Assembly (NCBI GenBank): GCA_907165135.1
Contig: CAJRAX010000010.1
Coordinates: 1-64,000, forward strand
Direction of reading: 5' to 3'
DNA length: 64,000 nt
Source: Oikopleura dioica
Lineage: Eukaryota > Animalia > Chordata
Notes under the pieces: model-generated
The model's database searches: none
What the model saw: the letters and a program-made list of their open reading frames with translations, nothing else
Told to the model about the DNA's origin: nothing
Shown: piece after piece, positions 5,864-62,224 of the stretch
How the letters are laid out: every line of letters starts with the position of its first letter
Position numbering within the stretch: the first letter of the stretch is position 1
Position numbers and translations under genes: made by a program

Positions 5864-8800
5864 AACGCATCAGAATTTTTTTTATTTTTTTTCGATTTTT
5901 TTGAACTGTAAATTATCTGAAAACGCCAAAAAACGCATCAGAATTTTTTTTATTTTTTTTATTTTTATGAACTGTAAATCATCTGAAAACGCCAAAAAAC
6001 GCATCAGAATTTTTCTTAATTTTTTTTATATTTTTATGAATTGTAAATCATCTGAAAACGCCAAAAAACGCATCAGAATTTTTATTAATTTTTTTTCATT
6101 TTTATGAACTGTAAATCATCTGAAAACGCCAAAAAACGCATCAGAATTTCTTTTATTTTTTTTATTTTTATGAACTGTAAATCATCTGAAAACGCCAAAA
6201 AACGCATCAGAATTTTTTTTTTATTTTTTTTTTTTATTTTTATGAATTGTAAATCATCTGAAAACGCAAAAAAACGCATCAGAATTTTTCTTTATTTTTT
6301 CGTTTATTTTTATGAACTGTAAATTATCTGAAAACGCCAAAAAACGCATCAGAATTTTTCTTAATTTTTTTTTTTTATGAACTGTAAATCATCTGAAAAC
6401 GCCAAAAAACGCATCAGAATTTTTATTAATTTTTTTTTATTTTTTTATAAACTGTAAATTATCTGAAAACGCCAAAAAATGCATCAGAATTTTTTTTTAT
6501 TTTTTTTTGTTATTTTAATGAACTGTAAATCATCTGAAAACGCCAAAAAACGCATCAGATTTTTTATTAATTTTTTTTATATTTTTTTGTACTGTAAATT
6601 ATCTGAAAACGCCAAAAAACGCATCAGAATTTTTATTAATTTTTTTTTTTATTTTCATGAACTGTAAATCATCTGAAAACGCCAAAAAACGCATCAGAAT
6701 TTTTCTTAATCTTTTTTTTTATTTTTATGAATTGTAAATCATCTGAAAACGCCAAAAAACGCATCAGAATTTCCTTAATTTTTTTCGATTTTTTTGAACT
6801 GTAAATTATCTGAAAACGCAAAAAAACGCATCAGAATTTTTATTAATTTTTTTTTTTATTTTTATGAACTGTAAATCATCTGAAAACGCCAAAAAATCCA
6901 TCAGAATTTTTATTTATTTTTTTTTATTATTTTTATGAACTGTAAATCATCTGAAAACGCCAAAAAACGCATCAGAATTTTTTTTATTTTTTTTTTATTT
7001 TTATGAAATGTAAATCATCTGAAAACGCCAAAAAACGCATCAGAATTTTTCTTCTTTTTTTATTTTTATGAAGTGTAAATCATCTGGAAACACCAAAAAC
7101 GCATCAGAATTTTTTTTTTTTTTTCATTTTTATGAACTGTAAATCATCTGAAAACGCCAAAGAACGCATCAGAATTTTTTATTTTTTCGATTTTTTGAAC
7201 TGTAAATTATCTGAAAACGCCAAAAAACGCATCAAATTTTTTTAATTTTTTTATTTTTATGAACTGTAAATCATCTGAAAACGCCAAAAAACGCATCAGA
7301 ATTTCCTTAATTTTTTTCGATTTTTTTGAACTGTAAATTATCTGAAAACGCAAAAAAACGCATCAGAATTTTTTTTATTTTTTTTCGATTTTTATGAACT
7401 GTAAATCATCTGAAAACGCCAAAAAATCCATCAGAATTTTAATTAATTTTTTTTTTATTTTTATGAACTGTAAATCATCTGAAAACGCCAAAAAACGCAT
7501 CAGAATTTTTTTTTTTTTTTTATTTTTATGAAATGTAAATCATCTGAAAACGCCAAAAAACGCATCAGAATTTTTCTTCTTTTTTTTTTATTTTTATGAA
7601 GTGTAAATCATCTGGAAACACCAAAAAACGCATCAGAATTTTTTTTTTTTTTTCATTTTTATGAACTGTAAATCATCTGAAAACGCCAAAATACGCATCG
7701 GAATTTATATTCATTTTTTTTTTATTTTTATGAACTGTAAATCATCTGAAAACGCCAAAAAACGCATCAAAATTTTTTATTTTTTTCGATTTTTTGAACT
7801 GTAAATTATCTGAAAACGCAAAAAAACGCATCAGAATTTTTTTATTTTTTTTTGATTTCTATGAACTGTAAATCATCTGAAAACGCCAAAAAACGCATCA
7901 GAATTTTTCTTAATTTTTTATATTTTTATGAACTGAAAATCATCTGAAAACGCCAAAATACGCATCAGAATTTTTATTAATTTTTTATTTTTATGAACTG
8001 TTAATCATCTGAAAACGCCAAAAAACGCATCAGAATTTTTTATTTTTTCGATTTTTTGAACTGTAAATTATCTGAAAACGCCAAAAAACGCATCAGAATT
8101 TTTTATTTTTTATTTTTATGAACTGTAAATCATCTGAAAACGCCAAAAAACGCATCAGAATTTTTCTTAATTTTTTATATTTTTATGAACTGTAAATCAT
8201 CTGAAAACGCCAAAAACGCATCAGAATTTTTATTATTTTTTTTTCATTTTTATGAACTGTAAATCATCTGAAAACGCCAAAAAACGCATCAGAATTTCTT
8301 TTTTTTTTATTTTTATGAACTGTAAATCATCTGAAAACGCCAAAAAACGCATCAGAATTTCTTTTTTTTTTTTATTTTTTTGAACTGTAAATAATCTGAA
8401 AACGCAAAAAAACGCATCAGAATTTCTATTAATTTTTTTATTTTAATGAACTGTAAATCATCTGAAAACGCCAAAAACGCATCAGAATTTTTCTTAATTT
8501 TTTCGATTTTTATGAACTGTAAATCATCTGAAAACGCCAAAAAACGCATCAGAATTTTTCTTAATTTTTCGTTTATTTTTATGAACTGTAAATTATCTGA
8601 AAACGCCAAAAAACGCATCAGAATTTTTTTTTTTTTTATTTTTTGAACTGTAAATTATCTGAAAACGCAAAAAAACGCATCAGAATTTTTCTTAATTTTT
8701 TTTTATATTTTTATGAACTGTAAATCATCTGAAAACGCCAAAAAACGCATCAGAATTTTTCTTAATTTTTTTCGATTTTTCTGAACTGTAAATTATCTGA

Positions 8801-11800
8801 AAACGCCAAAAAACGCATCAGAATTTTTCTTAATTTTTTATATTTTTATGAACTGTAAATCATCTGAAAACGCCAAAAAACGCATCAGAATTTTTTTTTA
8901 TTTTTTTTTTATTTTTTTGAACTGTAAATTATCTGAAAACGCAAAAAAACGCATCAGAATTTCTATTAATTTTTTTTTATTATTTTTATGAACTGTAAAT
9001 CATCTGAAAACGCCAAAAAACGCATCAGAATTTTTTTTGTTTTTTTTCGATTTTTTTGAACTGTAAATTATCTGAAAACGCCAAAAAACGCATCAGAATT
9101 TTTTTTAATTTTTTTTTATTTTTATGAACTGTAAATCATCTGAAAACGCCAAAAAACGCATCAGAATTTCCTTAATTTTTTTCGATTTTTTTGAACTGTA
9201 AATTATCTGAAAACGCCAAAAACGCATCAGAATTTTTTTATTTTTTTATTTTTATGAACTGTAAATCATCTGAAAACGCCAAAAACGCATCAGAATTTTT
9301 CTTTTTTTTTATTTTTATGAACTGTAAATCATCTGAAAACGCCAAAAACGCATCAGAATTTATATTCATTTTTTTATTTTTATGAACTGTAAATCATCTG
9401 AAAACGCCAAAAAACGCATCAGAATTTTTTTATTTTTTTCGATTTTTTTGAACTGTAAATTATCTGAAAACGCCAAAAACGCATCAGAATTTTTTTATTT
9501 TTTTATTTTTATGAACTGTAAATCATCTGAAAACGCCAAAAACGCATCAGAATTTTAATTAATTTTTTTTATTTTTATGAACTGTAAATCATCTGAAAAC
9601 GCCAAAAACGCATCAGAATTTTTTTAATTTTTTATATTTTTTGAACTGTAAATTATCTGAAAACGCAAAAACGCATCAGAATTTTTATTAATTTTTTATT
9701 TTTATGAACTGTAAATCATCTGAAAACGCCAAAAATCCATCAGAATTTTTATTTATTTTTTATTATTTTTATGAACTGTAAATCATCTGAAAACGCCAAA
9801 AACGCATCAGAATTTTTTTATTTTTATTTTTATGAACTGTAAATCATCTGAAAACGCCAAAAACGCATCAGAATTTTTTTATTTTTTTTTATTTTTATGA
9901 ACTGTAAATCATCTGAAAACGCCAAAAACGCATCAGAGTTTTTTTATTTTTATGAACTGTAAATCATCTGAAAACGCCAAAAAACGCATCAGAATTTTTT
10001 TTATTTTTTTATTTTTATGAACTGTAAATCATCTGAAAACGCCAAAAAACGCATCAGAATTTTTTTTATTTTTTTTATTTTTATGAACTGTAAATCATCT
10101 GAAAACGCCAAAAAACGCATCAGAATTTTTTTTATTTTTTTTTTTTTATGAACTGTAAATCATCTGAAAACGCCAAAAACGCATCAGAATTTTTTTTTTT
10201 TTTCGATTTTTTTGAACTGTAAATTATCTGAAAACGCCAAAAAACGCATCAGAATTTTTTTAATTTTTTTATTTTTATGAACTGTAAATCATCTGAAAAC
10301 GCCAAAAACGCATCAGAATTTTTTTTAATTTTTTTTATATTTTTTTGCACTGTAAATTATCTGAAAACGCACAAAAACGCATTTGAATTTTTATTAATTT
10401 TTTTTTTTATTTTTATGAACTGTAAATCATCTGAAAACGCCAAAAAACGCATCAGAATTTTTATTTATTTTTTTTATTATTTTTATGAACTGTAAATCAT
10501 CTGAAAACGCCAAAAAACGCATCAGAATTTTTTTTAATTTTTTTTTTATTTTTATGAACTGTAAATCATCTGAAAACGCCAAAAAACGCATCAGAATTTT
10601 TTTTATTTTTTTTCGATTTTTTTGAACTGTAAATTATCTGAAAACGCCAAAAAACGCATCAGAATTTTTTTTTTTTTTTTTTTTTGAACTGTAAATCATC
10701 TGAAAACGCCAAAAAACGCATCAGAATTTTTTTTAATTTTTTTTATATTTTTTGTACTGTAAATTATCTGAAAACGCCAAAAAACGCATCAGAATTTTTA
10801 TTAATCTTTTTTTTTATTTTTATGAACTGTAAATCATCTGAAAACGCCAAAAAACGCATCAGAATTTTTCTTAATCTTTTTTTTTATTTTTATGAACTGT
10901 AAATCATCTGAAAACGCCAAAAAACGCATCAGAATTTCCTTAATTTTTTTCGATTTTTTTGAACTGTAAATTATCTGAAAACGCCAAAAAACGCATCAGA
11001 ATTTTTATTAATTTTTTTTATTTTTATGAACTGTAAATCATCTGAAAACGCCAAAAACGCATCAGAATTTTTATTTATTTTTTTATTATTTTTATGAACT
11101 GTAAATCATCTGAAAACGCCAAAAACGCATCAGAATTTTTTTTATTTTTATTTTTATGAACTGTAAATCATCTGAAAACGCCAAAAACGCATCAGAATTT
11201 TTTTATTTTTTCGATTTTTTTGAACTGTAAATTATCTGAAAACGCCAAAAACGCATCAGAATTTTTTTAATTTTTTTTATTTTTATGAACTGTAAATCAT
11301 CTGAAAACGCCAAAAACGCATCAGAATTTCCTTAATTTTTTCGATTTTTTGAACTGTAAATTATCTGAAAACGCAAAAAAACGCATCAGAATTTTTATTA
11401 ATTTTTTTTTTTATTTTTATGAACTGTAAATCATCTGAAAACGCCAAAAAACGCATCAGAATTTTTTTTATTTTTTTTCATTTTTATGAACTGTAAATCA
11501 TCTGAAAACGCCAAAAAACGCATCAGAATTTTTATTATTTTTTTTATTTTTATGAACTGTAAATCATCTGAAAACGCCAAAAAACGCATCAGAATTTTTT
11601 TTATTTTTTTTCGATTTTTTTGAACTGTAAATTTTGAATTGTAAATCATCTGAAAACGCCAAAAAACGCATCAGAATTTATCTTAATTTTTTCGTTTATT
11701 TTTATGAACTGTAAATTATCTGAAAACGCCAAAAAACGCATCAGAAATTTTTTTAATTTTCTTTTTTATTTTTTTGAACTGTAAATTATCTGAAAACGCG

Positions 11801-14800
11801 AAAAACGCATCAGAATTTCTATTAATTTTTTTTTTATTTTTATGAACTGTAAATCATCTGAAAACGCCAAAAAACGCATCAGAATTTTTCTTTATTTTTT
11901 CGATTTTTCTGAACTGTAAATTATCTGAAAACGCCAAAAACGCATCAGAATTTTTCTTAATTTTTTATATTTTTATGAACTGTAAATCATCTGAAAACGC
12001 CAAAAACGCATCAGAATTTTTATTAATTTTTTATTTTTATGAACTGTAAATCATCTGAAAACGCCAAAAACGCATCAGAATTTTTTAATTTTTTTATTTT
12101 TATGAACTGTAAATCATCTGAAAACGCCAAAAACGCATCAGAATTTTTTTTAATTTTTTATTATTATGAACTGTAAATCATCTGAAACGCCAAAAACGCA
12201 TCAGAATTTTTCTTAATTTTTCGTTTATTTTTATGAACTGTAAATCATCTGAAAACGCCAAAAACGCATCAGAATTTTTCTTAATTTTTTATATTTTTAT
12301 GAACTGTAAATCATCTGAAAACGCCAAAAAACGCATCAGAATTTATATTTATTTTTTTTATTTTTATGAACTGTAAATCATCTGAAAACGCAAAAACGCA
12401 TCAGAATTTTTAATTAATTTTTTTATTTTTATGAACTGTAAATCATCTGAAAACGCAAAAACGCATCAGAATTTATATTTATTTTTTTATTTTTATGAAC
12501 TGTTAATCATTTGAAAACGCCAAAAAACGCATCAGAATTTTTCTTAATTTTTTTCGATTTTTTTGAACTGTAAATTATCTGAAAACGCCAAAAAACGCAT
12601 CAGAATTTTTTTAATTTTTTATTTTTTGAACTGTAAATTATCTGAAAACGCCAAAAACGCATCAGAATTTCTATTAATTTTTTTATTTTTATGAACTGTA
12701 AATCATCTGAAAACGCCAAAAACGCATCAGAATTTTTTTTTATTTTTTCATTTTTATGAACTGTAAATTATCTGAAAACGCCAAAAACGCATCAGAATTT
12801 TTTAATTTTTTTATTTTTATGAACTGTAAATCATCTGAAAACGCCAAAAAACGCATCAGAATTTCCTTAATTTTTTTCGATTTTTTTGAACTGTAAATTA
12901 TCTGAAAACGCAAAAAAACGCATCAGAATTTTTTTTTTTTTGAACTGTAAATCATCTGAAAACGCCAAAAAACGCATCAGAATTTTTTTATTTTTTCGAT
13001 TTTTTGAACTGTAAATTATCTGACAACGCCAAAAAACGCATCAGAATTCTTTTTAATTTTTTTTTTTTTTGAACTGTAAATCATCTGAAAACGCCAAAAA
13101 ACGCATCAGAATTTTTTTAATTTTTTATATTTTTTGAACTGTAAATCATCTGAAAACGCCAAAAAACGCATCAGAATTTTTAATTTTTTTTTTATTTTTA
13201 TGTACTGTAAATTATCTGAAAACGCCAAAAAACGCATCAGAATTTTTCTTAATCTTTTTTTTTATTTTTATGAATTGTAAATCATCTGAAAACGCCAAAA
13301 AACGCATCAGAATTTCCTTAATTTTTCTCGATTTTTTTGAACTGTTAATTATCTGAAAACGCAAAAAAACGCATCAGAATTTTTATTAATTTTTTTTTTT
13401 ATTTTTATGAACTGTAAATCATCTGAAAACGCCAAAAAATCCATCAGAATTTTTATTTATTTTTTTTTATTATTTTTATGAACTGTAAATCATCTGAAAA
13501 CGCCAAAAAACGCATCAGAGTTTTTTTTTATTTTTTTTATTTTTATGAACTGTAAATCATCTGAAAACGCCAAAAAAGGCATCAGAATTTTTTTTTTTTT
13601 CGATTTTTTGAACTGTAAATTATCTGAAAACGCCAAAAACGCATCAGAATTTTTTTAATTTTTTATTTTTATGAACTGTAAATCATCTGAAAACGCCAAA
13701 AAACGCATCAGAATTTCCTTAATTTTTTCGATTTTTTGAACTGTAAATTATCTGAAAACGCCAAAAAACGCATCAGAATTTTTTTTAATTTTTTTATTTT
13801 TATAAACTGTAAATCATCTGAAAACGCCAAAAACGCATCAGAATTTTTTTTATTTTTTCATTTTTATGAACTGTAAATCATCTGAAAACGCCAAAAACGC
13901 ATCAGAATTTTTATTCATTTTTTTATTTTTATGAACTGTAAATCATCTGAAAACGCCAAAAACGCATCAGAATTTTTTATTTTTTCGATTTTTTGAACTG
14001 TAAATTTTGAATTGTTAATCATCTGAAAACGCCAAAAACGCATCAGAATTTTTCTTAATTTTTCGTTTATTTTTATGAACTGTAAATTATCTGAAAACGC
14101 CAAAAACGCATCAGAAATTTTTTAATTTTTTTTTTTTTGAACTGTAAATTATCTGAAAACGCGAAAAACGCATCAGAATTTCTATTAATTTTTTATTTTT
14201 ATGAACTGTAAATCATCTGAAAACGCCAAAAACGCATCAGAATTTTTCTTTATTTTTTCGATTTTTCTGAACTGTAAATTATCTGAAAACGCCAAAAAAC
14301 GCATCAGAATTTTTCTTAATTTTTTTATATTTTTATGAACTGTAAATCATCTGAAAACGCCAAAAAACGCATCAGAATTTTTATTATTTTTTTTTATTTT
14401 AATGAACTGTAAATCATCTGAAAACGCCAAAAAACGCATCAGAATTTTTTTATTTTTTTTCATTTTTATGAACTGTAAATCATCTGAAAACGCCAAAAAA
14501 CGCATCAGAATTTTTTTTTAATTTTTTTTTTTATGATGAACTGTAAATCATCTTGAAACGCCAAAAAACGCATCAGAATTTTTCTTAATTTTTTCGTTTA
14601 TTTTTATGAACTGTAAATCATCTTGAAACGTCAAAAAACGCATCAGAATTTTTCTTAATTTTTTATATTTTTAAGAACTGTAAATCATCTGAAAACGCCA
14701 AAAACGCATCAGAATTTTTATTAATTTTTTTTTATTTTTATGAACTGTAAATCATCTGAAAACGCAAAAAAAACGCATCAGAATTTTTAATTAATTTTTT

Positions 14801-17800
14801 TTTATTTTTATGAACTGTAAATCATCTGAAAACGCAAAAACGCATCAGAATTTATATTTATTTTTTTATTTTTATGAACTGTTAATCATCTGAAAACGCC
14901 AAAAAACGCATCAGAATTTTTCTTAATTTTTTCGATTTTTTTGAACTGTAAATTATCTGAAAACGCCAAAAACGCATCAGAATTTTTTTAATTTTTTTAT
15001 TTTTTTGAACTGTTAATTATCTGAAAACGCCAAAAACGCATCAGAATTTCTATTAAATTTTTTATTTTTATGAACTGTAAATCATCTGAAAACGCCAAAA
15101 ACGCATCAGAATTTTTTTTTATTTTTTTCATTTTTATGAACTGTAAATTATCTGAAAACGCCAAAAACGCATCAGAATTTTTTAATTTTTTTTATTTTTA
15201 TGAACTGTAAATCATCTGAAAACGCCAAAAACGCATCAGAATTTCCTTAATTTTTTCGATTTTTTGAACTGTAAATTATCTGAAAACGCAAAAAACGCAT
15301 CAGAATTTTTTTTATTTTTTCGATTTTTATGAACTGTAAATCATCTGAAAACGCCAAAAAATCGCATCAGAATTTTAATTAATTTTTTTTTTATTTTTAT
15401 GAACTGTAAATCATCTGAAAACGCCAAAAAACGCATCAGAATTTTTTTTATTTTTTTATTTTTATGAAATGTAAATCATCTGAAAACGCCAAAAAACGCA
15501 TCAGAATTTTTTTTCTTTTTTTTTTTTTTATGAACTGTAAATCATCTGAAAACGCCAAAAACGCATCAGAATTTTTTCTAATTTTTTTTCATTTTTATGA
15601 ACTGTAAATCATCTGAAAACGCCAAAATACGCATCAGAAATTATATTCATTTTTTTATTTTTATGAACTGTAAATCATCTGAAAACGCCAAAAACGCATC
15701 AGAATTTTTTTTATTTTTTCGATTTTTTGAACTGTAAATTATCTGAAAACGCAAAAAAACGCATCAGAATTTTTTTATTTTTATGAACTGTAAATCATCT
15801 GAAAACGCCAAAAAACGCATCAGAATTTTTCTTTATTTTTTATATTTTTATGAACTGTAAATCATCTGAAAACGCCAAAATACGCATCAGAATTTTTATT
15901 AATTTTTTTTTTATTTTTATGAACTGTTAATCATCTGAAAACGCCAAAAAACGCATCAGAATTTTTTTTATTTTTTTTCGATTTTTTTGAACTGTAAATT
16001 ATCTGAAAACGCCAAAAAACGCATCAGAATTTTTTTTTTTTTTATTTTTATGAACTGTAAATCATCTGAAAACGCCAAAAACGCATCAGAATTTTTTAAT
16101 TTTTTATATTTTTATGAACTGTAAATCATCTGAAAACGCCAAAAAACGCATCAGAATTTTTATTAATTTTTTTCATTTTTATGAACTGTAAATCATCTGA
16201 AAACGCCAAAAAACGCATCAGAATTTCTTTAATTTTTTTTTATTTTTATGAACTGTAAATCATCTGAAAACGCCAAAAACGCATCAGAATTTTTTTAATT
16301 TTTTATTTTTATGAACTGTAAATCATCTGAAAACGCCAAAAACGCATCAGAATTTTTCTTAATTTTTTCGTTTATTTTTATGAACTGTAAATTATCTGAA
16401 AACGCCAAAAACGCATCAGAATTTTTTTATTTTTTTTTTATTTTTTGAACTGTAAATTATCTGAAAACGCAAAAAAACGCATCAGAATTTTATTAATTTT
16501 TTTTTTTTATTTAAATGAACTGTTAATCATCTGAAATTGCCAAAAAACGCATCAGAATTTTTCTTAATTTTTTTCGATTTTTCTGAACTGTAAATTATCT
16601 GAAAACGCCAAAAAACGCATCAGAATTTTTCTTAATTTTCTTTTTTATTTTTTTGAACTGTAAATTTTGAATTGTTAATCATCTGAAAACGCCAAAAAAC
16701 GCATCAGAATTTTTCTTAATTTTTTCGTTTATTTTTATGAACTGTAAATTATCTGAAAACGCCAAAAAACGCATCAGAAATTTTTTTAATTTTCTTTTTT
16801 ATTTTTTTGAACTGTAAATTATCTGAAAACGCGAAAAACGCATCAGAATTTCTATTAATTTTTTTTTTATTTTTATGAACTGTAAATCATCTGAAATTGC
16901 CAAAAAACGCATCAGAATTTTTCTTTATTTTTTTCGATTTTTCTGAACTGTAAATTATCTGAAAACGCCAAAAAACGCATCAGAATTTTTCTTAATTTTT
17001 TATATTTTTATGAACTGTAAATCATCTGAAAACGCCAAAAAACGCATCAGAATTTTTATTAATTTTTTTTTTTATTTTAATGAACTGTAAATAATCTGAA
17101 AACGCCAAAAAACGCATCAGAATTTTTTTAATTTTTTTTTTATTTTTATGAACTGTAAATCATCTGAAAACGCCAAAAAACGCATCAGAATTTTTTTTTT
17201 AATTTTTTTTTTATTATGATGAATTGTAAATCATCTTGAAACGCCAAAAAACGCATCAGAATTTTTCTTAATTTTTTCGTTTATTTTTATGAACTGTAAA
17301 TCATCTGAAAACGTCAAAAAACTTATCAGAATTTTTCTTAATTTTTTTTATATTTTTAAGAACTGTAAACCATCTGAAAACGCCAAAAAACGCATCAGAA
17401 TTTATATTTATTTTTTTCTATTTTTATGAACTGTAAATCATCTGAAAACGCAAAAAAAACGCATCAGAATTTTTAATTAATTTTTTTTTTTATTTTTATG
17501 AACTGTAAATCATCTAAAAACGCAAAAAACGCATCAGAATTTATATTTATTTTTTTTTATTTTTATGAACTGTTAATCATTTAAAAACGCCAAAAAACGC
17601 ATCAGAATTTTTCTTAATTTTTTTCGATTTTTTTGAACTGTAAATTATCTGAAAACGCCAAAAAACGCATCAGAATTTTTTTTTAATTTTTTTTTTATTT
17701 TTTTGAACTGTTAATTATCTGAAAACGCCAAAAAACGCATCAGACTTTCTATTAAATTTTTTTTTTATTTTTATGAACTGTAAATCATCTGAAAACGCCA

Positions 17801-41398: not shown

Positions 41399-41401
41399 GT
41401 G

Positions 41402-42690: not shown

Positions 42691-43248
42691 AAAACTTTTG
42701 TTAGTTCTGTAAAAAGTTTAGGTCGCCAACATTTTATTGATGCTCACATTTTTAACAAAAACGTAAAATTGATGATTGATACAGGCTCACAGATAAATCT
42801 TATTGGACGTGAGTATGTGCCTGATTCAGAAAAAATATACAAAAATGATTTAAAAATTTTCGCGTATAATAATACTATTGTTCCTGTTGTTGGATATATA
42901 TTGACAAATTTAATTATTGATGGACAAAACTGGGGTCGCGCGCGATTCTATGTTGTTAATGATCGATTGAACTGTATTTTGGGAACTTCTTCAATCGAGG
43001 AGCTTGAACTTATTATTAATCTTCATCGCAAGAGATTGATTAAAGGCGGTGCGATTGAACGATTTGCAAATATTTCTGAAATAACAGTAGAGCCAGACAA
43101 GGGTGAAAATGAACAGTTAGAGGGTATTCTTATGGATACTATTACTTTAAAACCAAGAACAGAACAATTAGTAGATTTACACGTTCGAAACATAAAAAAC
43201 TGTCGTCATTATTTTTTGAAAACTCGTGTCTTAAAAACTGTAAATTAG
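42664..43248 (+). CDS. pol: Pol N-terminal part: aspartic protease (MIDTGS)
   Basis: Aligns to A Pol N-terminus; separated from the RT ORF by one missing T in the run at 43212-43217. Confidence 0.9.
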   Translation: MSSGQAFNPKTFVSSVKSLGRQHFIDAHIFNKNVKLMIDTGSQINLIGREYVPDSEKIYKNDLKIFAYNNTIVPVVGYILTNLIIDGQNWGRARFYVVNDRLNCILGTSSIEELELIINLHRKRLIKGGAIERFANISEITVEPDKGENEQLEGILMDTITLKPRTEQLVDLHVRNIKNCRHYFLKTRVLKTVN

Positions 43249-43262
43249 AATTTCTCCCCTCC

Positions 43263-46200
43263 TTGCAAGAAGTCTCGCCTGATTCACCAATTTTTCGCAT
43301 ATTGATTCTTAACATGACGGATTCTTCAATAAAACTTGATAAAGGGACAAAACTAGTAGAGCTTTTTGAAGTATGTAAAGTCGGTCAGATTAAAGAGGAA
43401 GCAGTTGAAGAAATTCTTCAAAATATAAAAGTTGGCCCGATTTCGAGTGAAAATAAGCCAAAATTTTTTGATCTTATGAAAGAGTTTTGCTATCTTTTAT
43501 TAAAAGAAGCAGATTATATACCGGAATGTTCAATTGCCGAATTCAATATAGATACCATTGATTCTGTCCCTTCTGTATCTCAGCCATATAGAACAGCCTT
43601 TGCGTTACGGCAAACTATGTGGGATATTCTGAATAATTATTTGGAGAATAAAGTTATCGAGCCCTGTATATCAGTATGGAATTCTCCATGTTTGTTAGTA
43701 AGAAAAAAAGGTGGATCTTGGCGCCTCGTAGTTGACTACAGAAAATTGAATCAGAATACTCATCAGTTTCATTATCCGCTACCATCGCTTGAAGATTCTA
43801 TTTCTTATATGCAAAATAGCAAAATATTTAGTGCATGCGATCTGTATAAGGGATTCCATCAGGTTCGAATTAGCCCGGAGTCTGCTAATAAAACGGCATT
43901 TTCAACTGAACACGGCCAATTTAGATTTTTAAGAATGCCGATGGGTCTAAAAAATTCCCCTTGTTTTTTTATGCTTGTTATGGATAAGGCTCTTGAAAAT
44001 ATCCCAAAGTCAGCTGTCCTAGCTTACATGGATGATGTTTGTATTCATAGCGTTTCAGAGGCTGAGCATTTAGTTAATTTAAGAAAATTTTTCATGGCCT
44101 TAGCGGCGAATAATTTACGATTAAATGCAAAAAAATGCAGTTTTTTCGAAAATTCAGTCGATTTTTGTGGATATAACATTGGTAATGGAAAAGTAAAACC
44201 ATCGAAAGCAAGAATTGAATCGATTAAAAATTTGAGAGAGCCAAAAAACAAAAATGAGGCAATGTCAATTTTCGGTATGCTAAATTATCATAGAAGATTC
44301 ATTAAAAATTTTGCTGATAAAGCGAAGGCAATAACTAATTCTTATAAAGGTCAATTTTTTTGGGATTCTGAAGCTCAACAAGCATTTGAAAATTTAAAAA
44401 AGGAAATAACAGAGAATGCCCTTGAATTATCTATAGCGCCTATTGAAGGTGGGAGACTTGTTTTGGAAACGGATGCAAGCCATAGCGGTTATGGGGGTGT
44501 TCTTTATCTTTGCGAGGAAAAGAATAACACTGATGGCCATTTACATGGGGAACGGTGCCTGCGGCCCGTCGCTTACAATTCGGGTAATTTTACGGAAGCT
44601 CAACTTAAATACATAGTTTTGGAAAAGGAAATGTTAAGTGCAAAATTATCCATGGAGAAATGGTCTGTTTATCTAAAATTCCGGAAATTTGATTTGATTA
44701 CTGACAACTCCAATCTTAAATATATTCAGTCCTTTCGTACAAATAATAGTAGATTACAGCGTTGGATTGCGGATATAATGGCATTTGATTTTAGAATCAT
44801 ACTAAAACCGTCGTCTCAAATGAAAATTTCGGATTGTTTGTCGCGTTTTACCAAAGTATCGCAGCTAAAAGCTGCGGAATCGAATTTTCTTGATCTTCAG
44901 AAACTTGACCCGGATCTCAAACAAATCATTAATTTTACAAAGATCGACAGATGGCCAAACGTTCCACCGCCAAAATTACTTCCGTATTTGATTCACCGTC
45001 ACGATTTTTATTTTCTCGAATCGGGAGAGCTAGCGATTCGATCAACAGACAAAACCTTTAGGATTTGCGTTCCAGAAATTAAACAAAATGAAATAATTGA
45101 GACATATCATAATGATTGCCATGATGGCATTGATATAACATATTCCAAAATTATTCGAAAATATTACTGGAAAAATATGAAGGAGACAATTACAGGCTTC
45201 ATCAAAACGTGTTTTTACTGTCAAACGAGAAAGCCAAATAATCACCCTAATCGGGCCCCGACGAAAACTTTTGTGACCCCTGAAGGGCCTTATCAAGCGA
45301 TGGGATTTGACCTTATTGGGCCTCTTAGACCAACTGATTTAGGGATGATCTACATTTTTACCGCCGTTGATTTTTTTTCCAAAAAAGTTTATGCTGAGCC
45401 CTTAAATTCCAAAAAATCGGATTATTTATTAGGAAAATTCAAAAATATGATTTTTCGCAATCCAGTCTTTCCGCAATTTTGTTTATTCGATAACGCGCCT
45501 GAATTTATTAAAATTAAATCATTTTGTGAGACTCACAGTATCAAGTTTAATCAATCGCCGCCTCGACATCCATCAACAAATGGAGCCGTCGAAAACATAA
45601 ACAGAACTCTTAAATCCAGACTTCGAGCCAAATGCGATATGATTAATTGGGACCAATGTATAAATGAAGTCCTTCATTCGATAAATAGTTCAATTCACTC
45701 AGTTACAAAATTTTCGCCCTTTACGATTGAAACGGGGATTAAAAACCCTCAATTTATTAATGATTTGAATTGGCGAAAAAATGAAAATAAAATGGAAATC
45801 GATTTTAATGAAATTAAGGCAAGAATTGACCGTGAGAAACAAGCAAGATGTGAGAAATCGAATAATTTAAATTTTAAGGAATATCAATTGAATGATAAGG
45901 TGCTTATCAAAAATTTTCGCTCAAAATTTCCCCCATTTATCGGTCCTATGACAATTATCGAGAAGCATTTGACAGTATATACCTGTAGAGATGATAAAAC
46001 TGCAAAAATTTTCAAACGCCATGCTGATGATCTAAAGATTTTTTATATACGTAGAGAAACAACTGAAAGCTTAGATACTGGTTTAGTTGATCAATCGGAG
46101 CCGGCTTCAGCATGTGAAAAAGATTCAGGATTTTGTGAATTTCTGTTTTCACAAGGATCAATTTTCGAGGATTTTTCTCAATTTGAATGTTTAAAGCCGC

Positions 46201-46682
46201 ATGAGAATGTCGAAGATTCGACGGGCGAATCGATAATAAATGCAGAATTTTCTTATGGCGAAAACAATGATTTAGAAATAATTTCTCGGGCGGAAGAATT
46301 ATCAAGTGAAAGTGAAAGGCCTGTAGAAAATAAAACTGACGAAACTTCTGATCAAGTGATTTTAGAGCCTCACTCTTCGGAGAAAATTGAAAGTTCGTTA
46401 GAATCGGATTTGGATACTGACACTAATGAGGATGAAAATCAAGTGATACAAGGGAATAATCTAAGCCATATTGCTAATGAATCAGATTTAACGGGAGAAA
46501 TTGATATTGTTGCGGGCAATATTAGGCAAGAAAGCTTTTCGGACGAAACATCAATGCGGGTTGAGTTAACGGCTTATTCTGATCTTCAGATTACAGAAAA
46601 TTATCAACCTATCCCTCAAAAGTCAAATAAACGCAGATACAATTTTTCAAGCGACTCTGATTCAGATATTCGGGAGGACTAA
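43263..46682 (+). CDS. pol: Pol: RT (YMDD), RNase H, integrase (HHCC, DDE, GPM variant of GPY/F), acidic Ser/Glu linker
   Basis: 1139-aa ORF collinear with A Pol. Confidence 0.96.
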   Translation: MQEVSPDSPIFRILILNMTDSSIKLDKGTKLVELFEVCKVGQIKEEAVEEILQNIKVGPISSENKPKFFDLMKEFCYLLLKEADYIPECSIAEFNIDTIDSVPSVSQPYRTAFALRQTMWDILNNYLENKVIEPCISVWNSPCLLVRKKGGSWRLVVDYRKLNQNTHQFHYPLPSLEDSISYMQNSKIFSACDLYKGFHQVRISPESANKTAFSTEHGQFRFLRMPMGLKNSPCFFMLVMDKALENIPKSAVLAYMDDVCIHSVSEAEHLVNLRKFFMALAANNLRLNAKKCSFFENSVDFCGYNIGNGKVKPSKARIESIKNLREPKNKNEAMSIFGMLNYHRRFIKNFADKAKAITNSYKGQFFWDSEAQQAFENLKKEITENALELSIAPIEGGRLVLETDASHSGYGGVLYLCEEKNNTDGHLHGERCLRPVAYNSGNFTEAQLKYIVLEKEMLSAKLSMEKWSVYLKFRKFDLITDNSNLKYIQSFRTNNSRLQRWIADIMAFDFRIILKPSSQMKISDCLSRFTKVSQLKAAESNFLDLQKLDPDLKQIINFTKIDRWPNVPPPKLLPYLIHRHDFYFLESGELAIRSTDKTFRICVPEIKQNEIIETYHNDCHDGIDITYSKIIRKYYWKNMKETITGFIKTCFYCQTRKPNNHPNRAPTKTFVTPEGPYQAMGFDLIGPLRPTDLGMIYIFTAVDFFSKKVYAEPLNSKKSDYLLGKFKNMIFRNPVFPQFCLFDNAPEFIKIKSFCETHSIKFNQSPPRHPSTNGAVENINRTLKSRLRAKCDMINWDQCINEVLHSINSSIHSVTKFSPFTIETGIKNPQFINDLNWRKNENKMEIDFNEIKARIDREKQARCEKSNNLNFKEYQLNDKVLIKNFRSKFPPFIGPMTIIEKHLTVYTCRDDKTAKIFKRHADDLKIFYIRRETTESLDTGLVDQSEPASACEKDSGFCEFLFSQGSIFEDFSQFECLKPHENVEDSTGESIINAEFSYGENNDLEIISRAEELSSESERPVENKTDETSDQVILEPHSSEKIESSLESDLDTDTNEDENQVIQGNNLSHIANESDLTGEIDIVAGNIRQESFSDETSMRVELTAYSDLQITENYQPIPQKSNKRRYNFSSDSDSDIRED

Positions 46683-47342
46683 ATTTTAGTTCAAGACCCA
46701 ATTGTTTTGGCCAAAAAACCAATTTCGGGAAAAAAATTGGAGCAAGAAACAATCAAAAAGAAATCGGCTTCGTCTTCTCTTCCGGATTTGAATTTTTCAA
46801 ATTTTTTTCCAAATTTTGACCAAAATAAGGGTGATCATGAAATGATTGATTTTGAAGACTTAAAATTAATTGTGATCTTTGAAAACGAACACGAAAATCT
46901 TTTTTCTGAAATTGATAAATCATCCATTAATTACGATAAAAATACAGTAATCGAAACAGCTTGCGTACTAAAACAGTCAGAATTACCAAAAGATGTAATT
47001 CTATTTATTTGTAGACAATTTAAAATAGATCATACGCCGGCTGAAAAAATGGCTGAATTAAATATTCGAATAAGAGATTGGTTAATCGAGAATCAGCCAA
47101 ATTGGCACAAGGGAAGTTCGGGGGAGTATTTATTTCTTTGCAATCTTTTTTTGAGAAGAAATTTCACTCTTTCGGAATTCCGGGCCCCAGAACTTAAATG
47201 TCTGGCATCCTTTTATTTATTACCAAAATTAAATTTTATTTCAAGATCAGTTTTCTCTGAATACATCAAAAGTTATTTTTCTGAACACTTTCCGAATCAA
47301 CCATGTAAAAATCGTGATCTTCTTTTTGGCCCAGACATTTAA
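46683..47342 (+). CDS. In-frame continuation of pol after a single TAA; tandem SAP/HeH-like module homologous to the A Pol C-terminus
   Basis: Same reading frame as 43263-46682 (GAC TAA ATT TTA GTT); aligns by eye to the last ~130 aa of A Pol. Confidence 0.85.
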   Translation: MLVQDPIVLAKKPISGKKLEQETIKKKSASSSLPDLNFSNFFPNFDQNKGDHEMIDFEDLKLIVIFENEHENLFSEIDKSSINYDKNTVIETACVLKQSELPKDVILFICRQFKIDHTPAEKMAELNIRIRDWLIENQPNWHKGSSGEYLFLCNLFLRRNFTLSEFRAPELKCLASFYLLPKLNFISRSVFSEYIKSYFSEHFPNQPCKNRDLLFGPDI

Positions 47343-47403
47343 GTATAGGATTTCCATTTTCAGTATAAAAGAAAAAAAAATATATCCCCTGGCGCGGGCA
47401 TAG

Positions 47404-48556
47404 TGATACCTAATGTGAAAAAAAAATAATATACTGAATCGCCAAATCACGGCCAAAATAAAAAACAATGCATGATTTCACAAGCTTACATTAAGTGCTA
47501 ATCAAGTTGATTAGGCCTCGTCAAAAATCAAGAAAAAATATGGCAAACCAAAAAAAATAGAAAAAATAAAGGTTTGATGATTAGACTGAGGGTTATTTCT
47601 AGCATGAGAACGCTAGAAAAATTGTTAACAGTATTTGCACGTACGCGTGTGTTCACATATTTCTAGGCACATTAGCCAGCCCTTTTGATATCTTACGATT
47701 CAAAAGGTTTTATTATTAATCCCTTTTAGGTTTAAACTAATTTACGCATGAATTTATCTCACGATCTTCATAATCAACCATCCTTACAATATTCTTGTTC
47801 TTTTCTTTATTTATTTCCTTTCAAAATAAGTTGACTGTACTTGGACGACAAATCTTTTTGGACGCCGTTGGAAGACTCCTTCTTACTGTTGAGCTTCCCG
47901 TAAGGGCTGAACGCTAAGTAGCCGCGGGCAGAATATCCCAAACCGGCAAAAAGCGTTTATAAGCGCTCACAGGTAATCGAACTCGCCGAGGACCGGTTAC
48001 TGCTTTTCTAGGAAACTGACCATTTTCGACATTGCAGTTACACGTGCGCGTGACGCCGACCCGACAAGAACGACAACGACGACATCTACTACTACGACAA
48101 CGACGACGGAAACCTTGCCTGGACCGACAATGGAATTCTGACAACAACAACGACTAATGCCCTGGAATTTGTCGAGACTTGTAATAAAACAGTGGGTCAC
48201 ATAGTGAGAAAGCTGTTTTATTACAAGTTTTTGGCAAAAAGCGCCACCTATGGCGAATTGATAAAAATAGAAATTTTTCAACAAAATCGTAACATATTAT
48301 ATAATTATCTGAAATTGATGTTACGTAAACAGATGATGAAAGTTAGCCGATTACGCCTTACGTAAGAAGCCACAATGGCCGAAATGGCCCCATTTACAAA
48401 AACAATAGAAAAATCCGGAACCAACCGGTTTCCGAAATGGAACTTTTCAAAATTTGAAATTTCAAAAATCATTCTCGATTATCAATAAAACCACCACCAG
48501 CTTATTTTATTTTTCGTGTTCTTTGCAAGGATTTTAGCAAGCCGCAATTTGTATCA
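47404..48556 (+). repeat. 3' LTR of B (1153 bp)
   Basis: Repeat of 40279-41398 with a ~33-bp insertion and scattered substitutions. Confidence 0.97.
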
Positions 48557-48774: not shown

Positions 48775-49782
48775 TGATACGAATAGAGGAAAGAACACAA
48801 GAAAAAAATGAAAAATTGAATATCCCAGTCACATAACTATTTTCGCCAATTAGGTTGATTAGGCATGAATTTCACAGTTTTATGTTCCGACGATTTTTGG
48901 AGCCAAATCTCGGATGCTTGCATGAATTCATAAATCTCTATTTTTACTTCATAACGTACGCGTTATTTCACAATTCAAAGGCACCTTAGCCATCCGTTTC
49001 GGCGGTTCTTTATTTAACTCTTTCTAGTGCTCACTACTTCTTTGTTTAATTTATGAATCGAGCTGACTCTTCAATGTCTTCAAACGATGAGGGCAATTCT
49101 TCTTGATTATAAAAAATCAACTGGCTTTTTCTACTACTACAACGGAGCTGTTGCATGTATTTCATCCTCTAGCTGAGTTCCGCTTTAAGCGGCTTGACAG
49201 TGTGACCCCGTGATCCTCGGGATGGCGCTGTCTGTAAGTGCTCCTAGGTAGGCAAAATTGATTGAACACCTTTCTGGCTCGCTTTAGGAAAGCTGACCAC
49301 TCTCCTCAAAACCGACAGAATTGCAGCTTCAACAATGGCGGCGACTTCTCTGACAACAACGACGACTACGCAATGGACTGACAACGATTACTGGAACTGG
49401 CTTTGGAAAAGTATTGATACAAATTCATTAAATTTTATCAGAAAGGGATATGGCCACATAGTGGGAAATTGAACTTTCTGATATGATTTATTTCTTGCGA
49501 CTAATTTCGAAGCAAACGTGGCTGTTTTGGCGAAATTCGAGCGACAGAAAAACAAGTGCGCGAAAAGCGCTCACCATATTTGGAAAGAAAAACATGGCGC
49601 GAAATGCGCCAAATGCCTTATTTGGAAACAATAGCACCTGCGCGAAATGCGAATTGAAAATTTGAAATTTTGAAAAATCACTCTCTCCGTACCCAAAATA
49701 ATACAGCCACGTTTTGAAATTTTGGCGTCATTCTTTGCAAGTATTCTAGCTTAGAGAGCATTTGAGCAGCAAATCGGTATCA
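48775..49782 (+). mobile_element. Solo LTR, family C (1008 bp), TSD GTAAA
   Basis: TGATAC...GTATCA termini; GTAAA at 48770-48774 and 49783-49787; motifs shared with LTR B in the same order; no internal region. Confidence 0.92.
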
Positions 49783-54016: not shown

Positions 54017-57000
54017 GTAAATCATCTGAAAACGCCAAAAAACGCATCAGAATTTTTTTTTTAATTTTTTTTTTATTTCGATGAATTGTAAATCATCTTG
54101 AAACGCCAAAAAACGCATCAGAATTTTTCTTAATTTTTTCGTTTATTTTTATGAACTGTAAATCAAATGAAAACGTCAAAAAACTTATCAGAATTTTTCT
54201 TAATTTTTTTTATATTTTTAAGAACTGTAAACCATCTGAAAACGCCAAAAAACGCATCAGAATTTATATTTATTTTTTTTCTATTTTTATGAACTGTAAA
54301 TCATCTGAAAACGCAAAAAACGCAACAGAATTTATATTTATTTTTTTTTATTTTTATGAACTGTAAATCATTTAAAAACGCCAAAAAACGCATCAGAATT
54401 TTTCTTAATTTTTTTCGATTTTTTGAACTGTAAATTATCTGAAAACGCCAAAAACGCATCAGAATTTTTTAATTTTTTATTTTTTGAACTGTAAATTATC
54501 TGAAAACGCCAAAAACGCATCAGACTTTCTATTTATTTTTTTATTTTTATGAACTGTAAATCATCTGAAAACGCCAAAAACGCATCAGAATTTTTTTATT
54601 TTTTTCATTTTTATGAACTGTAAATTATCTGAAAACGCCAAAAACGCATCAGAATTTTTTTAATTTTTTATTTTTATGAACTGTTAATCATCTGAAAACG
54701 CAAAACGACGCATCAGAATTTTTTATTTTTATTTCATTTTTATGAAATGTAAATCATCTGAAAACGCCAAAAACGCATCAGAATTTTTTTATTTTTTTCA
54801 TTTTTATGAACTGTAAATCATCTGAAAACGCCAAAAACGCATCAGAATTTTTCTTAATTTTTTTCGATTTTTTTGAACTGGAAATTATCTGAAAACGCCA
54901 AAAAATGCATCAGAATTTTTATTATTTTTTTTTGATTTTTATGAACTGTAAATCATCTAAAAACGCAAAAAACGCAACAGAATTTATATTTATTTTTTTT
55001 TATTTTTATGAACTGTAAATCATTTAAAAACGCCAAAAAACGCATCAGAATTTTTCTTAATTTTTTCGATTTTTTGAACTGTAAATTATCTGAAAACGCC
55101 AAAAACGCATCAGAATTTTTTTAATTTTTTATTTTTTGAACTGTAAATTATCTGAAAACGCCAAAAAACGCATCAGACTTTCTATTTTTTTTTTTATTTT
55201 TATGAACTGTAAATCATCTGAAAACGCCAAAAAACGCATCAGAATTTTTTTTATTTTTTTTTTCATTTTTATGAACTGTAAATTATCTGAAAACGCCAAA
55301 AAACGCATCAGAATTTTTTTTAATTTTTTTTTTATTTTTATGAACTGTTAATCATCTGAAAACGCAAAACGACGCATCAGAATTTTTTTATTTTTATTTC
55401 ATTTTTATGAAATGTAAATCATCTGAAAACGCCAAAAAACGCATCAGAATTTTTTTTTATTTTTTTTTTTCATTTTTATGAACTGTAAATCATCTGAAAA
55501 CGCCAAAAAACGCATCAGAATTTTTCTTAATTTTTTTCGATTTTTTTGAACTGGAAATTATCTGAAAACGCCAAAAAATGCATCAGAATTTTTATTATTT
55601 TTTTGATTTTTATGAACTGTTAATTATCTGAAAACGCCAAAAACGCATCAGAATTTTTTAATTTTTTTTTAATGAACTGTTAATCATCTGAAAACGCCAA
55701 AAACGCATCAGAATTTTTCTTAATTTTTTCGATTTTTTGAACTGTAAATTATCTGAAAACGCCAAAAACGCATCAGAATTTTTTTAATTTTTTATTTTTA
55801 TGAACTGTAAATTATCTGAAAACGCCAAAAAACGAATCAGAATTTTTCTCAATTTTTTTTTTTATTTTTATGAATTGTAAATTATCTGAAAACGCCAAAA
55901 AACGCATCAGAATTTTTATTAATTTTTTTTTTATTTTTATGAACTGTAAACCATCTGAAAACGCCAAAAACGCATCAGAATTTTTCTTAATTTTTTATAT
56001 TTTTATGAACTGTAAATCATCTGAAAACGCCAAAAAACGCATCAGAATTTTTATTTATTTATTTTTTATTTTTATGAACTGTAAATCATCTTAAAACGCA
56101 AAAAACGCATCAGAATTTATCTTTATTTTTTTTTTATTTTTATGAACTGTTAATCATCTAAAAACGCCAAAAAACGCATAAGAATTTTTCTTAATTTTTT
56201 ACGATTTTTTGAACTGTAAATTATCTGAAAACGCCAAAAAACACATAAGAATTTTTTTTAATTTTTTTTTATTTTTTTGAACTGTAAATTATCTAAAAAC
56301 GCCAAAAAACGCATCAGAATTTCTATTAATTTTTTTTTTTATTTTTATGAACTGTAAATCATCTGAAAACGCCAAAAAACGCATCAGAATTTCCTTAATT
56401 TTTTTCGATTTTTTTGAACTGTAAATTATCTGAAAACGCAAAAAAACGCATCAGAATTTTTATTAATTTTTTTTTTTTATTTTTATGAACTGTAAATCAT
56501 CTGAAAACGCCAAAAAATCCATCAGAATTTTTACCTTTTTTTTTATTATTTTTATGAACTGTAAATCATCTGAAAACGCCAAAAAACGCATCAGAGTTTT
56601 TTTTTATTATTTTTCGATTTTTTTGAACTGTAAATTATCTGAAAACGCCAAAAAACGCATCAGAATTCTTTTTTATTTTTTTTTATTTTTATGAACTATA
56701 AATCATCTGAAAACGCCAAAAACGCATCAGAATTTCCTTAATTTTTTCGATTTTTTGAACTGTAAATTATCTGAAAACGCAAAAACGCATCAGAATTTTT
56801 ATTAATTTTTTTTTATTTTTATAAACTGTAAATCATCTAAAACGCCAAAAATCCATCAGAATTTTAATTAATTTTTTATTTTTATGAACTGTAAATCATC
56901 TGAAAACGCCAAAAACGCATCAGAATTTTTTTATTTTTTTATTTTTATGAAATGTAAATCATCTGAAAACGCAAAAACGCATCAGAATTTTTCTTTTTTT

Positions 57001-62222: not shown

Positions 62223-62224
62223 TA

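What the first reader, a model, noticed from the sequence alone, without database searches (positions are those of the whole stretch)
5864..54021. A guild of four related LTR families inserted into one satellite, each with a clean 5-bp TSD of satellite core
Seen: five insertions (A1, A2, B, solo C, solo D) with LTRs of four different sequences, all bounded by TGATA(C)...(G)TATCA. TSDs map to core positions 4-8 (AACTG, B), 8-12 (GTAAA, C and D), 19-23 (GAAAA, A2) and 32-36 (AACGC, A1, one side only). No other transposon class is present and none is nested in another. Inference: a satellite-specialist clade analogous to plant centromeric retrotransposons. Caveat: the core is about two-thirds of the monomer, so five of five hits in the core is not significant on its own.
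Basis: partly seen in the sequence, partly recalled or inferred. Interest (0 to 1): 0.85.

Follow-up and report, generated by a model that had tools for sequence, protein, structure and literature searches.

The report
Gypsy retrotransposon lineage invading AT-rich satellite
One previously undescribed lineage of Ty3/gypsy retrotransposons has inserted at least five separate times into a 68-bp AT-rich satellite array, and its integrase ends in a pair of SAP-like DNA-binding motifs that could steer it there, though one window cannot prove targeting.

Summary
The window is a ~68-bp, 77% A+T satellite. It is interrupted only by two copies of element A (one cut by the window edge), one full element B and two solo LTRs, C and D. 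All have TGATA..TATCA ends. Four have a perfect 5-bp target-site duplication, and removing it restores a normal monomer.

A and B are Ty3/gypsy elements (PR-RT-RNaseH-IN). Their pol proteins are 48% identical and fall in one well-supported clade. The only other members come from marine metagenomes. C and D share LTR motifs with that clade.

New here: every pol in the clade ends, after the integrase, in a ~165-aa domain that is rare (53 clusters among 1.84 billion). It folds confidently and is an internal duplication of two SAP-like helix-extended-helix units. The match to SAP is convergent but below threshold.

A DNA-binding tether at that position makes targeting of A/T-tract satellite DNA plausible. 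Four of the five sites lie 3-7 bp from the T-tract spacer, but that pattern was found post hoc.

The "satellite specialist" claim remains untested. There is no genome-wide data, the metagenomic relatives carry no flanks, and the planned position statistics are not significant. Passive retention in satellite DNA is a live rival. I do not take the contig for human; the organism is unknown.

The parts
5864..28752 (+). Main block of the ~68-bp satellite: a 43-bp core plus a ~25-bp T-tract spacer, 23% G+C
   Evidence: TRF 343.9 copies, 87% matches; composition; core scan
1..5863 (-). Element A1, cut by the window start. 5' LTR 4565-5863, right flank AACGC at 5864-5868. Reading frames are broken by many homopolymer length differences.
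   Evidence: 99.25% identical to A2. 13 substitutions and 30 one- or two-base homopolymer deletions. ORF list.
28753..36958 (-). Element A2, full length (8206 bp), with open gag and pol frames. TSD GAAAA.
28753..30048 (-). A2 3' LTR (1296 bp). The polypurine-like tract lies just inside, at 30049-30069.
30098..34471 (-). A2 pol ORF, 1457 aa: PR, RT, RNase H, integrase (HHCC, DDE core, GPY/F-like), acidic/serine-rich linker, C-terminal domain
   Evidence: Pfam RVT_1 7.5e-31, RT_RNaseH, Integrase_H2C2, rve; alignment with B
30101..30604 (-). A2 C-terminal domain (pol aa ~1290-1457): two SAP-like strand plus helix-extended-helix units
34552..35724 (-). A2 gag ORF with two CCHC-like knuckles. The pol frame opens about 55 nt before the gag stop, in another frame.
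35645..35660 (-). A2 primer-binding site, starting TGGTGA directly after the 5' LTR. The same start is seen in the metagenomic relatives.
35661..36958 (-). A2 5' LTR (1298 bp)
36959..40278 (+). Satellite between A2 and B
40279..48556 (+). Element B, full length (8278 bp). 5' LTR 40279-41398, 3' LTR 47404-48556, TSD AACTG. Older than A2: 15 LTR substitutions and a 33-bp indel.
41399..42667 (+). B gag ORF, 31% identical to A gag
42664..43248 (+). B protease ORF, in a different frame from the RT ORF that follows
   Evidence: weak RVP hit; frames
43263..46682 (+). B RT-RNaseH-integrase ORF. It ends at an in-frame stop at 46680-46682.
46707..47342 (+). B C-terminal domain ORF, in the same frame as pol. 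Homologous to the A C-terminal domain (30% identity, E 4e-24).
48775..49782 (+). Solo LTR C (1008 bp), TSD GTAAA
52695..54016 (+). Solo LTR D (1322 bp), TSD GTAAA, at the same monomer position as C
54017..61520 (+). Satellite, including a diverged ~58-bp variant block at 59029-59579
61525..64000 (.). Same satellite with orientation flips: minus from 61525 to ~62230, plus from ~62231 to ~62770, minus from ~62790 to 64000

Best explanation
Shown:
- A long array of a 68-bp, 77% A+T satellite has been invaded at least five separate times by one deep clade of Ty3/gypsy LTR retrotransposons.
- The invaders are family A (two very young copies), family B (older) and two families that survive only as solo LTRs.
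- Each insertion is an ordinary integrase event with a 5-bp staggered cut.
- In this clade the pol protein continues past the integrase. A serine/acid-rich linker leads to a conserved ~165-aa domain made of two SAP-like helix-extended-helix units.

Inferred mechanism:
- The tandem SAP-like module binds A/T-tract-rich DNA, as SAP domains of SAF-A, Ku70 and PIAS do for AT-rich scaffold-attachment DNA (my background knowledge).
- It tethers the intasome to the T-tract spacer of the satellite.
- Strand transfer then happens in the adjacent, more bendable core, a few bases from the tract.
- Later LTR-LTR recombination turns some copies into solo LTRs.

On this reading the clade is biased towards this kind of satellite by a DNA-directed tether. 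It is analogous in logic to the chromodomain of chromoviruses or the CR motif of plant centromeric elements, but it is not a relative of them.
For: Element identity and independence:
- Junctions, TSDs and restored empty sites.
- Pfam domain order.
- A/B homology.
- One clade with SH-aLRT 99 on a long stem (quick tree).
- LTR ages: 2/1296 substitutions against 15/1120.
- C and D are colinear with LTRs of C-terminal-domain-bearing metagenomic elements.

Only this clade interrupts about 40 kb of satellite.

C-terminal domain:
- Present at the extreme pol C-terminus in A, in B and in all close relatives.
- Only 53 cluster representatives among 1.84 billion, nearly all at the C-terminal ends of long pol-like proteins or fragments.
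- AlphaFold2 mean pLDDT 84.7, pTM 0.82.
- The two halves are homologous: hhalign 97.6%, E 3.7e-12.

SAP-like signal from several methods:
- Best Foldseek PDB hit is the SAP-like C-terminal domain of MANF (probability 0.80).
- Best PDB profile hit is the Ku70 SAP domain 1JJR, followed by emerin LEM domains.
- Pfam SAP matches 6 of 37 members, best 22.5 bits against a cut-off of 23.9 over the whole model. Rho_N and SAP_new25 match four members each.
- SAP and Rho_N proteins recur among the top viral fold hits.

Site geometry: four of five TSDs lie 3-7 bp from the spacer. Simulation gives P = 0.0125, or 0.00085 if the 5'-LTR side is required. The cut-off was chosen after seeing the data.
Against: - No genome-wide distribution is available. 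The window contains only satellite and these elements, so 'five of five in satellite' carries no information.
- Every single SAP signal is below its formal threshold. Foldseek E is 1.1. The per-stretch E for Ku70 is 0.058, and the whole-chain E of 1.6e-6 is inflated because the deposited chain holds the same segment twice. Pfam falls below the gathering score.
- DNA binding is untested.
- The TSD sequences differ (AACTG, GTAAA, GAAAA, AACGC), and A2 sits in the middle of the core, 18-20 bp from either spacer.
- The position statistics planned in advance are not significant.
- If this clade is the host's dominant active transposon, exclusivity would follow without targeting.
Confidence: 0.45

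Rival explanations
1. Passive accumulation. The clade integrates more or less anywhere. Copies persist and pile up in the satellite because insertions there are harmless and recombination is low. The C-terminal domain serves some other purpose, such as nuclear retention or general chromatin binding.
For: - Planned position tests are not significant: 0.063, 0.14 and 0.11.
- TSD sequences and orientations vary.
- Two solo LTRs and an older, broken B show long residence.
- There are no flanks from any relative.
Against: - Four different families of one clade, and no other transposon class, occupy about 40 kb of satellite.
- Family A is very young: its LTRs differ at 2 of 1296 sites, and two copies differing by 0.2% lie 31 kb apart at different monomer positions. 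So the association is current and not only a residue of old insertions.
- Extra domains after the integrase are, in the known cases, targeting devices (my background knowledge).
Confidence: 0.35
2. Chromatin-directed targeting. The C-terminal domain recognises a protein or chromatin state that marks the array, such as centromeric nucleosomes or heterochromatin factors, and not the DNA itself. This is the mechanism proposed for plant centromeric retrotransposons and Ty5.
For: - The domain is joined to the integrase by a long, probably disordered linker, like known tethers.
- About 110 residues of the domain outside the helix-extended-helix motifs match nothing known.
- Orientation flips and transposon insertions are typical of centromere-like arrays.
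Against: - The only recognisable motif is of a DNA-binding type.
- No chromodomain, Tudor or similar reader was found.
- Nothing shows that the array is centromeric.
Confidence: 0.15
3. Assembly artefact. The insertions or their repetition are products of mis-assembly of a difficult repeat.
For: A1 carries 30 homopolymer deletions relative to A2, a long-read error signature. The array also has abrupt orientation flips near its end.
Against: - Each complete insertion has a perfect 5-bp TSD and an exactly restorable monomer.
- A1 and A2 have different flanking positions.
- The four LTR families are distinct in sequence.
Confidence: 0.03

Closest known systems
Ty3/gypsy (Metaviridae) LTR retrotransposons in general
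   Same: LTRs with TG..CA ends, a PBS directly after the 5' LTR, gag with CCHC knuckles, pol order PR-RT-RNaseH-IN, a GPY/F-like integrase tail and a 5-bp TSD.
   Different: - A separate clade on a long stem. It is at most 29% identical to named arthropod, mollusc or plant proteins and 42-64% identical only to unnamed marine-metagenome proteins.
- Conserved TGATAC..GTATCA ends and 1.0-1.3-kb LTRs.
- A unique C-terminal domain.
Chromoviruses and plant centromeric retrotransposons (CRM clade)
   Same: An extra module after the integrase GPY/F region, and repeated insertion of several related families into a satellite array.
   Different: - No chromodomain or CR-motif match.
- The extra module is a tandem SAP-like domain.
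- The elements do not group with the two plant sequences in the tree.
- Centromere location is unknown.
SAP / HeH DNA-binding domains (Ku70 C-terminus, SAF-A, PIAS, MANF C-terminal domain, LEM, Rho N-terminal)
   Same: A ~35-residue helix, extended loop, helix with the hydrophobic/Leu pattern. It gives the best PDB profile hit, the best Foldseek hit and recurrent Pfam hits.
   Different: - Scores are below the family thresholds.
- The motif occurs twice, each copy preceded by a strand and embedded in a larger fold with no match.
- It is fused to a retrotransposon integrase, which two literature searches did not find described.
Repeat-specific retrotransposons (R1/R2 in rDNA, TRAS/SART in telomeric repeats)
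   Same: Insertions within a tandem repeat unit.
   Different: - Those are non-LTR elements that cut one fixed nucleotide position.
- Here four different positions are used, and only C and D coincide.

Membership tests
Ty3/gypsy LTR retrotransposon | Pol domain order PR-RT-RNaseH-IN | tested here: met
   Pfam RVT_1, RT_RNaseH, Integrase_H2C2 and rve in that order in A and B, with a weak RVP hit upstream in B
Ty3/gypsy LTR retrotransposon | Direct LTRs with TG..CA ends, a PBS next to the 5' LTR, a purine-rich tract next to the 3' LTR, and a short TSD | tested here: met
   LTR pairs of 1296/1298 bp and 1120/1153 bp. PBS starting TGGTGA in A; in B a diverged version one base after the LTR. 5-bp TSDs.
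Ty3/gypsy LTR retrotransposon | Gag with zinc knuckle(s) | tested here: inconclusive
   CCHC patterns are visible in the A/B gag alignment. Pfam zf-CCHC gives only E 0.029.
Chromovirus / CRM centromeric retrotransposon | Chromodomain or CR motif at the integrase C-terminus | tested here: not met
   No chromo-type Pfam hit in the whole pol or in the C-terminal pieces, even at E up to 10
Chromovirus / CRM centromeric retrotransposon | Phylogenetic placement within chromoviruses | tested here: not met
   The clade is separated by a stem of 1.25 from the group holding the Dendrobium and Rhynchospora polyproteins (quick tree, no curated reference set)
Chromovirus / CRM centromeric retrotransposon | Enrichment in CENH3/CENP-A chromatin | not testable with these tools
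   No chromatin data, and the source genome is not available
SAP (HeH) domain | Sequence match to the family model above its curated threshold | tested here: inconclusive
   Best 22.5 bits against a cut-off of 23.9 (P0164, model positions 2-36 of 37). 6 of 37 members match at E up to 10. The window's own A copy gives E 0.087.
SAP (HeH) domain | Helix, extended loop, helix fold | tested here: inconclusive
   The AF2 model has two helix pairs, H57-66/H77-91 and H122-131/H143-157, at pLDDT above 90. Top Foldseek hit is the MANF C-terminal domain: rmsd 1.9 over 44 columns, probability 0.80, but E 1.1.
SAP (HeH) domain | Binds DNA, with a preference for AT-rich DNA | not testable with these tools
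   Needs a binding assay
Site-specific repeat-targeting retrotransposon | The same nucleotide position of the repeat unit used by all copies | tested here: not met
   Positions 4, 8, 8, 19 and 32 of the core

The most novel reading that the evidence does not exclude
The tandem SAP-like domain is a reader of A/T-tract satellite DNA fused to an integrase. It places the intasome a few base pairs from the T-tract spacer. This would make the clade the first LTR retrotransposon lineage with a DNA-directed (not chromatin- or protein-directed) satellite-targeting module. The clade is widespread in marine eukaryotes but absent from annotated protein databases.
Probability: 0.3. Interest if true: 0.8.

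Novelty: new variant of a known kind. Interest (0 to 1): 0.55.

Why it matters
How retrotransposons come to dominate satellite and centromeric arrays is a long-standing question. It is usually argued from plant CRM elements and their chromodomain-derived motif.

A second, unrelated lineage would give an independent, testable case of integration-site selection. It has a different bolt-on module of DNA-binding type after the integrase, and it is caught with very young insertions in an A/T-tract satellite. The module is small, folds confidently and could be assayed on its own.

If the association turns out to be passive, the result is still a clean description of a new Ty3/gypsy clade and a new domain.

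Tried and rejected
- Identifying the organism. The closest proteins are unnamed metagenome, ENA or Logan entries. No exact copy of the window's pol is in the collection. Literature searches on a 68-bp satellite and on Oikopleura gave nothing relevant. Relatives come from seawater samples including Tara, so a marine planktonic eukaryote is my guess only.
- Finding the satellite elsewhere. There were no exact matches in metagenome or viral contigs.
- Getting flanks of relatives to test satellite association. All contigs are LTR-collapsed circles or tandem gag-pol-LTR-gag-pol contigs, or are cut short. The first locus search failed for lack of conserved columns.
- Satellite derived from the LTRs: rejected. 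The core has no match of 25 nt or more inside any element.
- A1 and A2 as one segmental duplication: rejected. Their flanking monomer positions differ.
- RIP-like or other biased mutation between A1 and A2: rejected. There are 13 mixed substitutions; the differences are mostly homopolymer deletions.
- C and D as small non-autonomous elements with their own LTRs: rejected. They have no internal direct repeats.
- The careful maximum-likelihood search did not finish, so only the quick tree is cited.
- A fuzzy-regex scan timed out and was replaced by blastn-short.
- B's pol was searched in separate pieces and never read through its stop.
Full report
**What is in the window**

The 64-kb window is almost entirely a tandem repeat of about 65-70 bp (TRF: 343.9 copies at 5863-28752, further blocks to the end). 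It has 23% G+C, against 32-39% in the interruptions.

Each monomer has a 43-bp conserved core and a ~25-bp spacer made of T-runs. A blastn-short scan with the core found 580 units. Gaps longer than 50 bp occur only at five places that are transposon sequence, and at 59029-59579, which on reading is a diverged ~58-bp variant of the same repeat. The array changes orientation three times after 61.5 kb.

I do not take this contig for human. It holds apparently intact Ty3/gypsy elements whose nearest relatives come from seawater metagenomes.

**Check of the observation**

I read all the junctions and fixed the LTR boundaries with blastn, motif searches and pairwise alignments.

| Element | Coordinates | Strand | TSD or flank |
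|---|---|---|---|
| A1 | 1-5863 (cut by window start) | minus | right flank AACGC |
| A2 | 28753-36958 | minus | GAAAA |
| B | 40279-48556 | plus | AACTG |
| C | 48775-49782 | plus | GTAAA |
| D | 52695-54016 | plus | GTAAA |

- The ends are TGATAT..GTATCA for A and TGATAC..GTATCA for B, C and D.
- Taking out the element and one TSD copy restores a normal monomer in every complete case. The match is 43 of 43 core positions for A2 and 42 of 42 for D. The duplications are therefore real.

**What the elements are**

A2 and B have Pfam matches in the order RT, RNase H, integrase zinc finger, integrase core. B also has a weak protease match upstream. That is the Ty3/gypsy arrangement.

- A and B pol are 48% identical over 943 residues and their gag proteins 31% identical.
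- A2 has open gag and pol frames. The pol frame opens about 55 nt before the gag stop, in another frame.
- A2's LTRs differ at 2 of 1296 sites, so it is very young.
- B's LTRs differ at 15 of 1120 sites plus a 33-bp indel.
- B's coding region is broken by a frame change between protease and RT, and by one in-frame stop at 46680-46682.
- A1 differs from A2 by only 13 substitutions but by 30 one- or two-base deletions, all in homopolymer runs. I read that as long-read consensus error and not decay. It also means that T-run lengths in the satellite are not reliable.
- A1 and A2 sit at different monomer positions, so they are separate insertions.

C and D have no internal repeats and no coding sequence.

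- They share with A, B and a metagenomic LTR an A-rich stretch and a TCACGG-type box near the 5' end, and a TTCTTGCA(A/G)G / TTCTAG box near the 3' end.
- Local alignment scores in forward orientation exceed every shuffle: B-C 56 against a maximum of 29, and D-L001 58 against 30. Reverse orientation does not do this consistently and is always well below forward.
- C aligns colinearly with the LTRs of metagenomic elements L018 and L019, and D with L007.
- They are therefore solo LTRs of the same clade, in plus orientation.

**The clade**

The best database matches to A pol are 42-64% identical proteins on contigs of about 4-7 kb from JGI, ENA and Logan. The best named proteins, from arachnids and a bivalve, are 27-29% identical.

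- Samples include a JGI seawater metagenome and a Tara Oceans assembly.
- None of the ten cluster representatives I looked up has an NCBI or UniRef member.
- A quick maximum-likelihood tree of the RT-to-integrase region puts A, B and thirteen metagenomic proteins in one clade (SH-aLRT 99). A and B fall in different subclades. A stem of 1.25 changes per site separates the clade from the named sequences. The careful search did not finish.
- The relatives have the same TGATAC..GTATCA LTR ends, the same tract before the 3' LTR and a PBS starting TGGTGA.
- All these contigs are assemblies in which the two LTRs collapsed. They carry no host flanks.

**A new C-terminal domain**

After the integrase GPY/F-like region, A pol continues for about 340 residues. 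The last ~165 residues are homologous to the separate 211-aa ORF of B (30% identity, E 4e-24). That ORF lies in the same frame as B pol, behind the single stop. The same domain ends every close relative.

- A profile search of 1.84 billion cluster representatives found only 53 proteins. Nearly all matches lie at the C-terminus of long pol-like proteins or of fragments.
- AlphaFold2 on a 13-sequence alignment gives mean pLDDT 84.7 and pTM 0.82. The model shows two repeats of strand-helix-helix.
- hhalign of the two halves gives 97.6% probability and E 3.7e-12. The domain is therefore an internal duplication.

Several independent but individually weak signals say that each unit is a SAP-type helix-extended-helix motif:

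- The top Foldseek PDB hit is the SAP-like C-terminal domain of MANF (probability 0.80, rmsd 1.9 over 44 columns, E 1.1).
- With a 37-sequence profile, the top PDB sequence hit is the Ku70 SAP domain 1JJR, on unit 2. The per-stretch E is 0.058. The whole-chain E of 1.6e-6 is inflated because that chain holds the segment twice. Emerin LEM domains follow.
- Pfam SAP matches 6 of 37 members. The best is 22.5 bits against a cut-off of 23.9, over model positions 2-36 of 37, on unit 1. Rho_N and SAP_new25, related families, each match four members.
- SAP and Rho_N proteins recur among the top, non-significant viral fold matches.
- No chromodomain was found.
- Two literature searches found no description of a SAP domain in an LTR-retrotransposon integrase.

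**Does the clade target the satellite?**

The window cannot say, because every non-transposon base in it is satellite.

All five TSDs in the core gives P 0.063, two at the same position 0.14, and three within 5 bp 0.11.
- Looking at the sites afterwards, I noticed that four of the five TSDs lie 3-7 bp from the T-tract spacer, in each case on the side of the element's 5' LTR. A2 is the exception, in the middle of the core. Simulation gives P 0.0125 for the nearest spacer and 0.00085 with the side condition. The cut-off was chosen after seeing the data, so these are leads and not results.
- In favour of targeting: four families of one clade, and nothing else, occupy about 40 kb of satellite. The insertions span ages from 0.15% to 1.3% LTR divergence, plus the solo LTRs. 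A probable DNA-binding module sits where other Ty3/gypsy lineages carry their targeting domain. SAP domains are known from the literature to prefer AT-rich scaffold-attachment DNA (my background knowledge, not tested here).
- Against targeting: the points above, the differing TSD sequences, and the possibility that this clade is simply the host's main active transposon and is retained in a safe haven.

**Verdict**

"One related guild" is right. "Satellite specialist" is plausible and now has a candidate mechanism, but it is unproven.
- The elements are not members of the chromovirus/CRM family.
- I rate this a new variant of a known kind: Ty3/gypsy with an integrase-fused targeting-type module, here tandem SAP-like.
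- My confidence is about 0.45 in DNA-directed tethering, 0.35 in passive accumulation and 0.15 in chromatin-directed targeting.

**Handling notes**

- B's broken pol was searched piece by piece.
- One functional assay is referred.

Noticed in passing
window 1-5863 versus 28753-36958: A1 differs from A2 by 13 substitutions but by 30 one- or two-base deletions, all in A, T or C homopolymer runs. This is the signature of long-read consensus error. It explains A1's shattered ORFs and makes T-run lengths in the satellite unreliable.
   Followed up: yes
window 61480-61560, 62205-62253, 62756-62791: The satellite switches strand three times. The first breakpoint lies inside a core, with four odd bases (AGCG) between the arms. 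These could be inversions or assembly joins.
   Followed up: partly
window 59029-59579: A block of about nine monomers of a diverged, shorter (~58 bp) variant of the same satellite, with CG-containing spacers instead of T-runs.
   Followed up: partly
window 5864-28752 (odd units at 11553-11717, 16584-16750, 24330-24494): Identical 40-mers recur at spacings of about 7.73, 5.03 and 8.1 kb, and three 82-84-bp odd monomers recur at matching spacings. These are segmental duplications within the array, without a regular higher-order repeat.
   Followed up: partly
L017:7868-10384: A distant element from an ENA metagenome that carries the C-terminal domain has an extra 838-aa ORF after pol, possibly envelope-like. 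Its LTR contains a 196-bp tandem repeat.
   Followed up: no
L018 and L019: These metagenomic contigs read gag-pol-LTR-gag-pol. They are either tandem elements sharing one LTR or an assembly walk around collapsed LTRs.
   Followed up: no
window 41399-41420 versus 35645-35660 (minus strand): B's primer-binding region looks like A's TGGTGACCCC with two mismatches and sits one base after the LTR. The primer tRNA was not identified.
   Followed up: partly
window 47499-47531 (B 3' LTR): The 3' LTR of B has 33 bp that are absent from the 5' LTR.
   Followed up: partly
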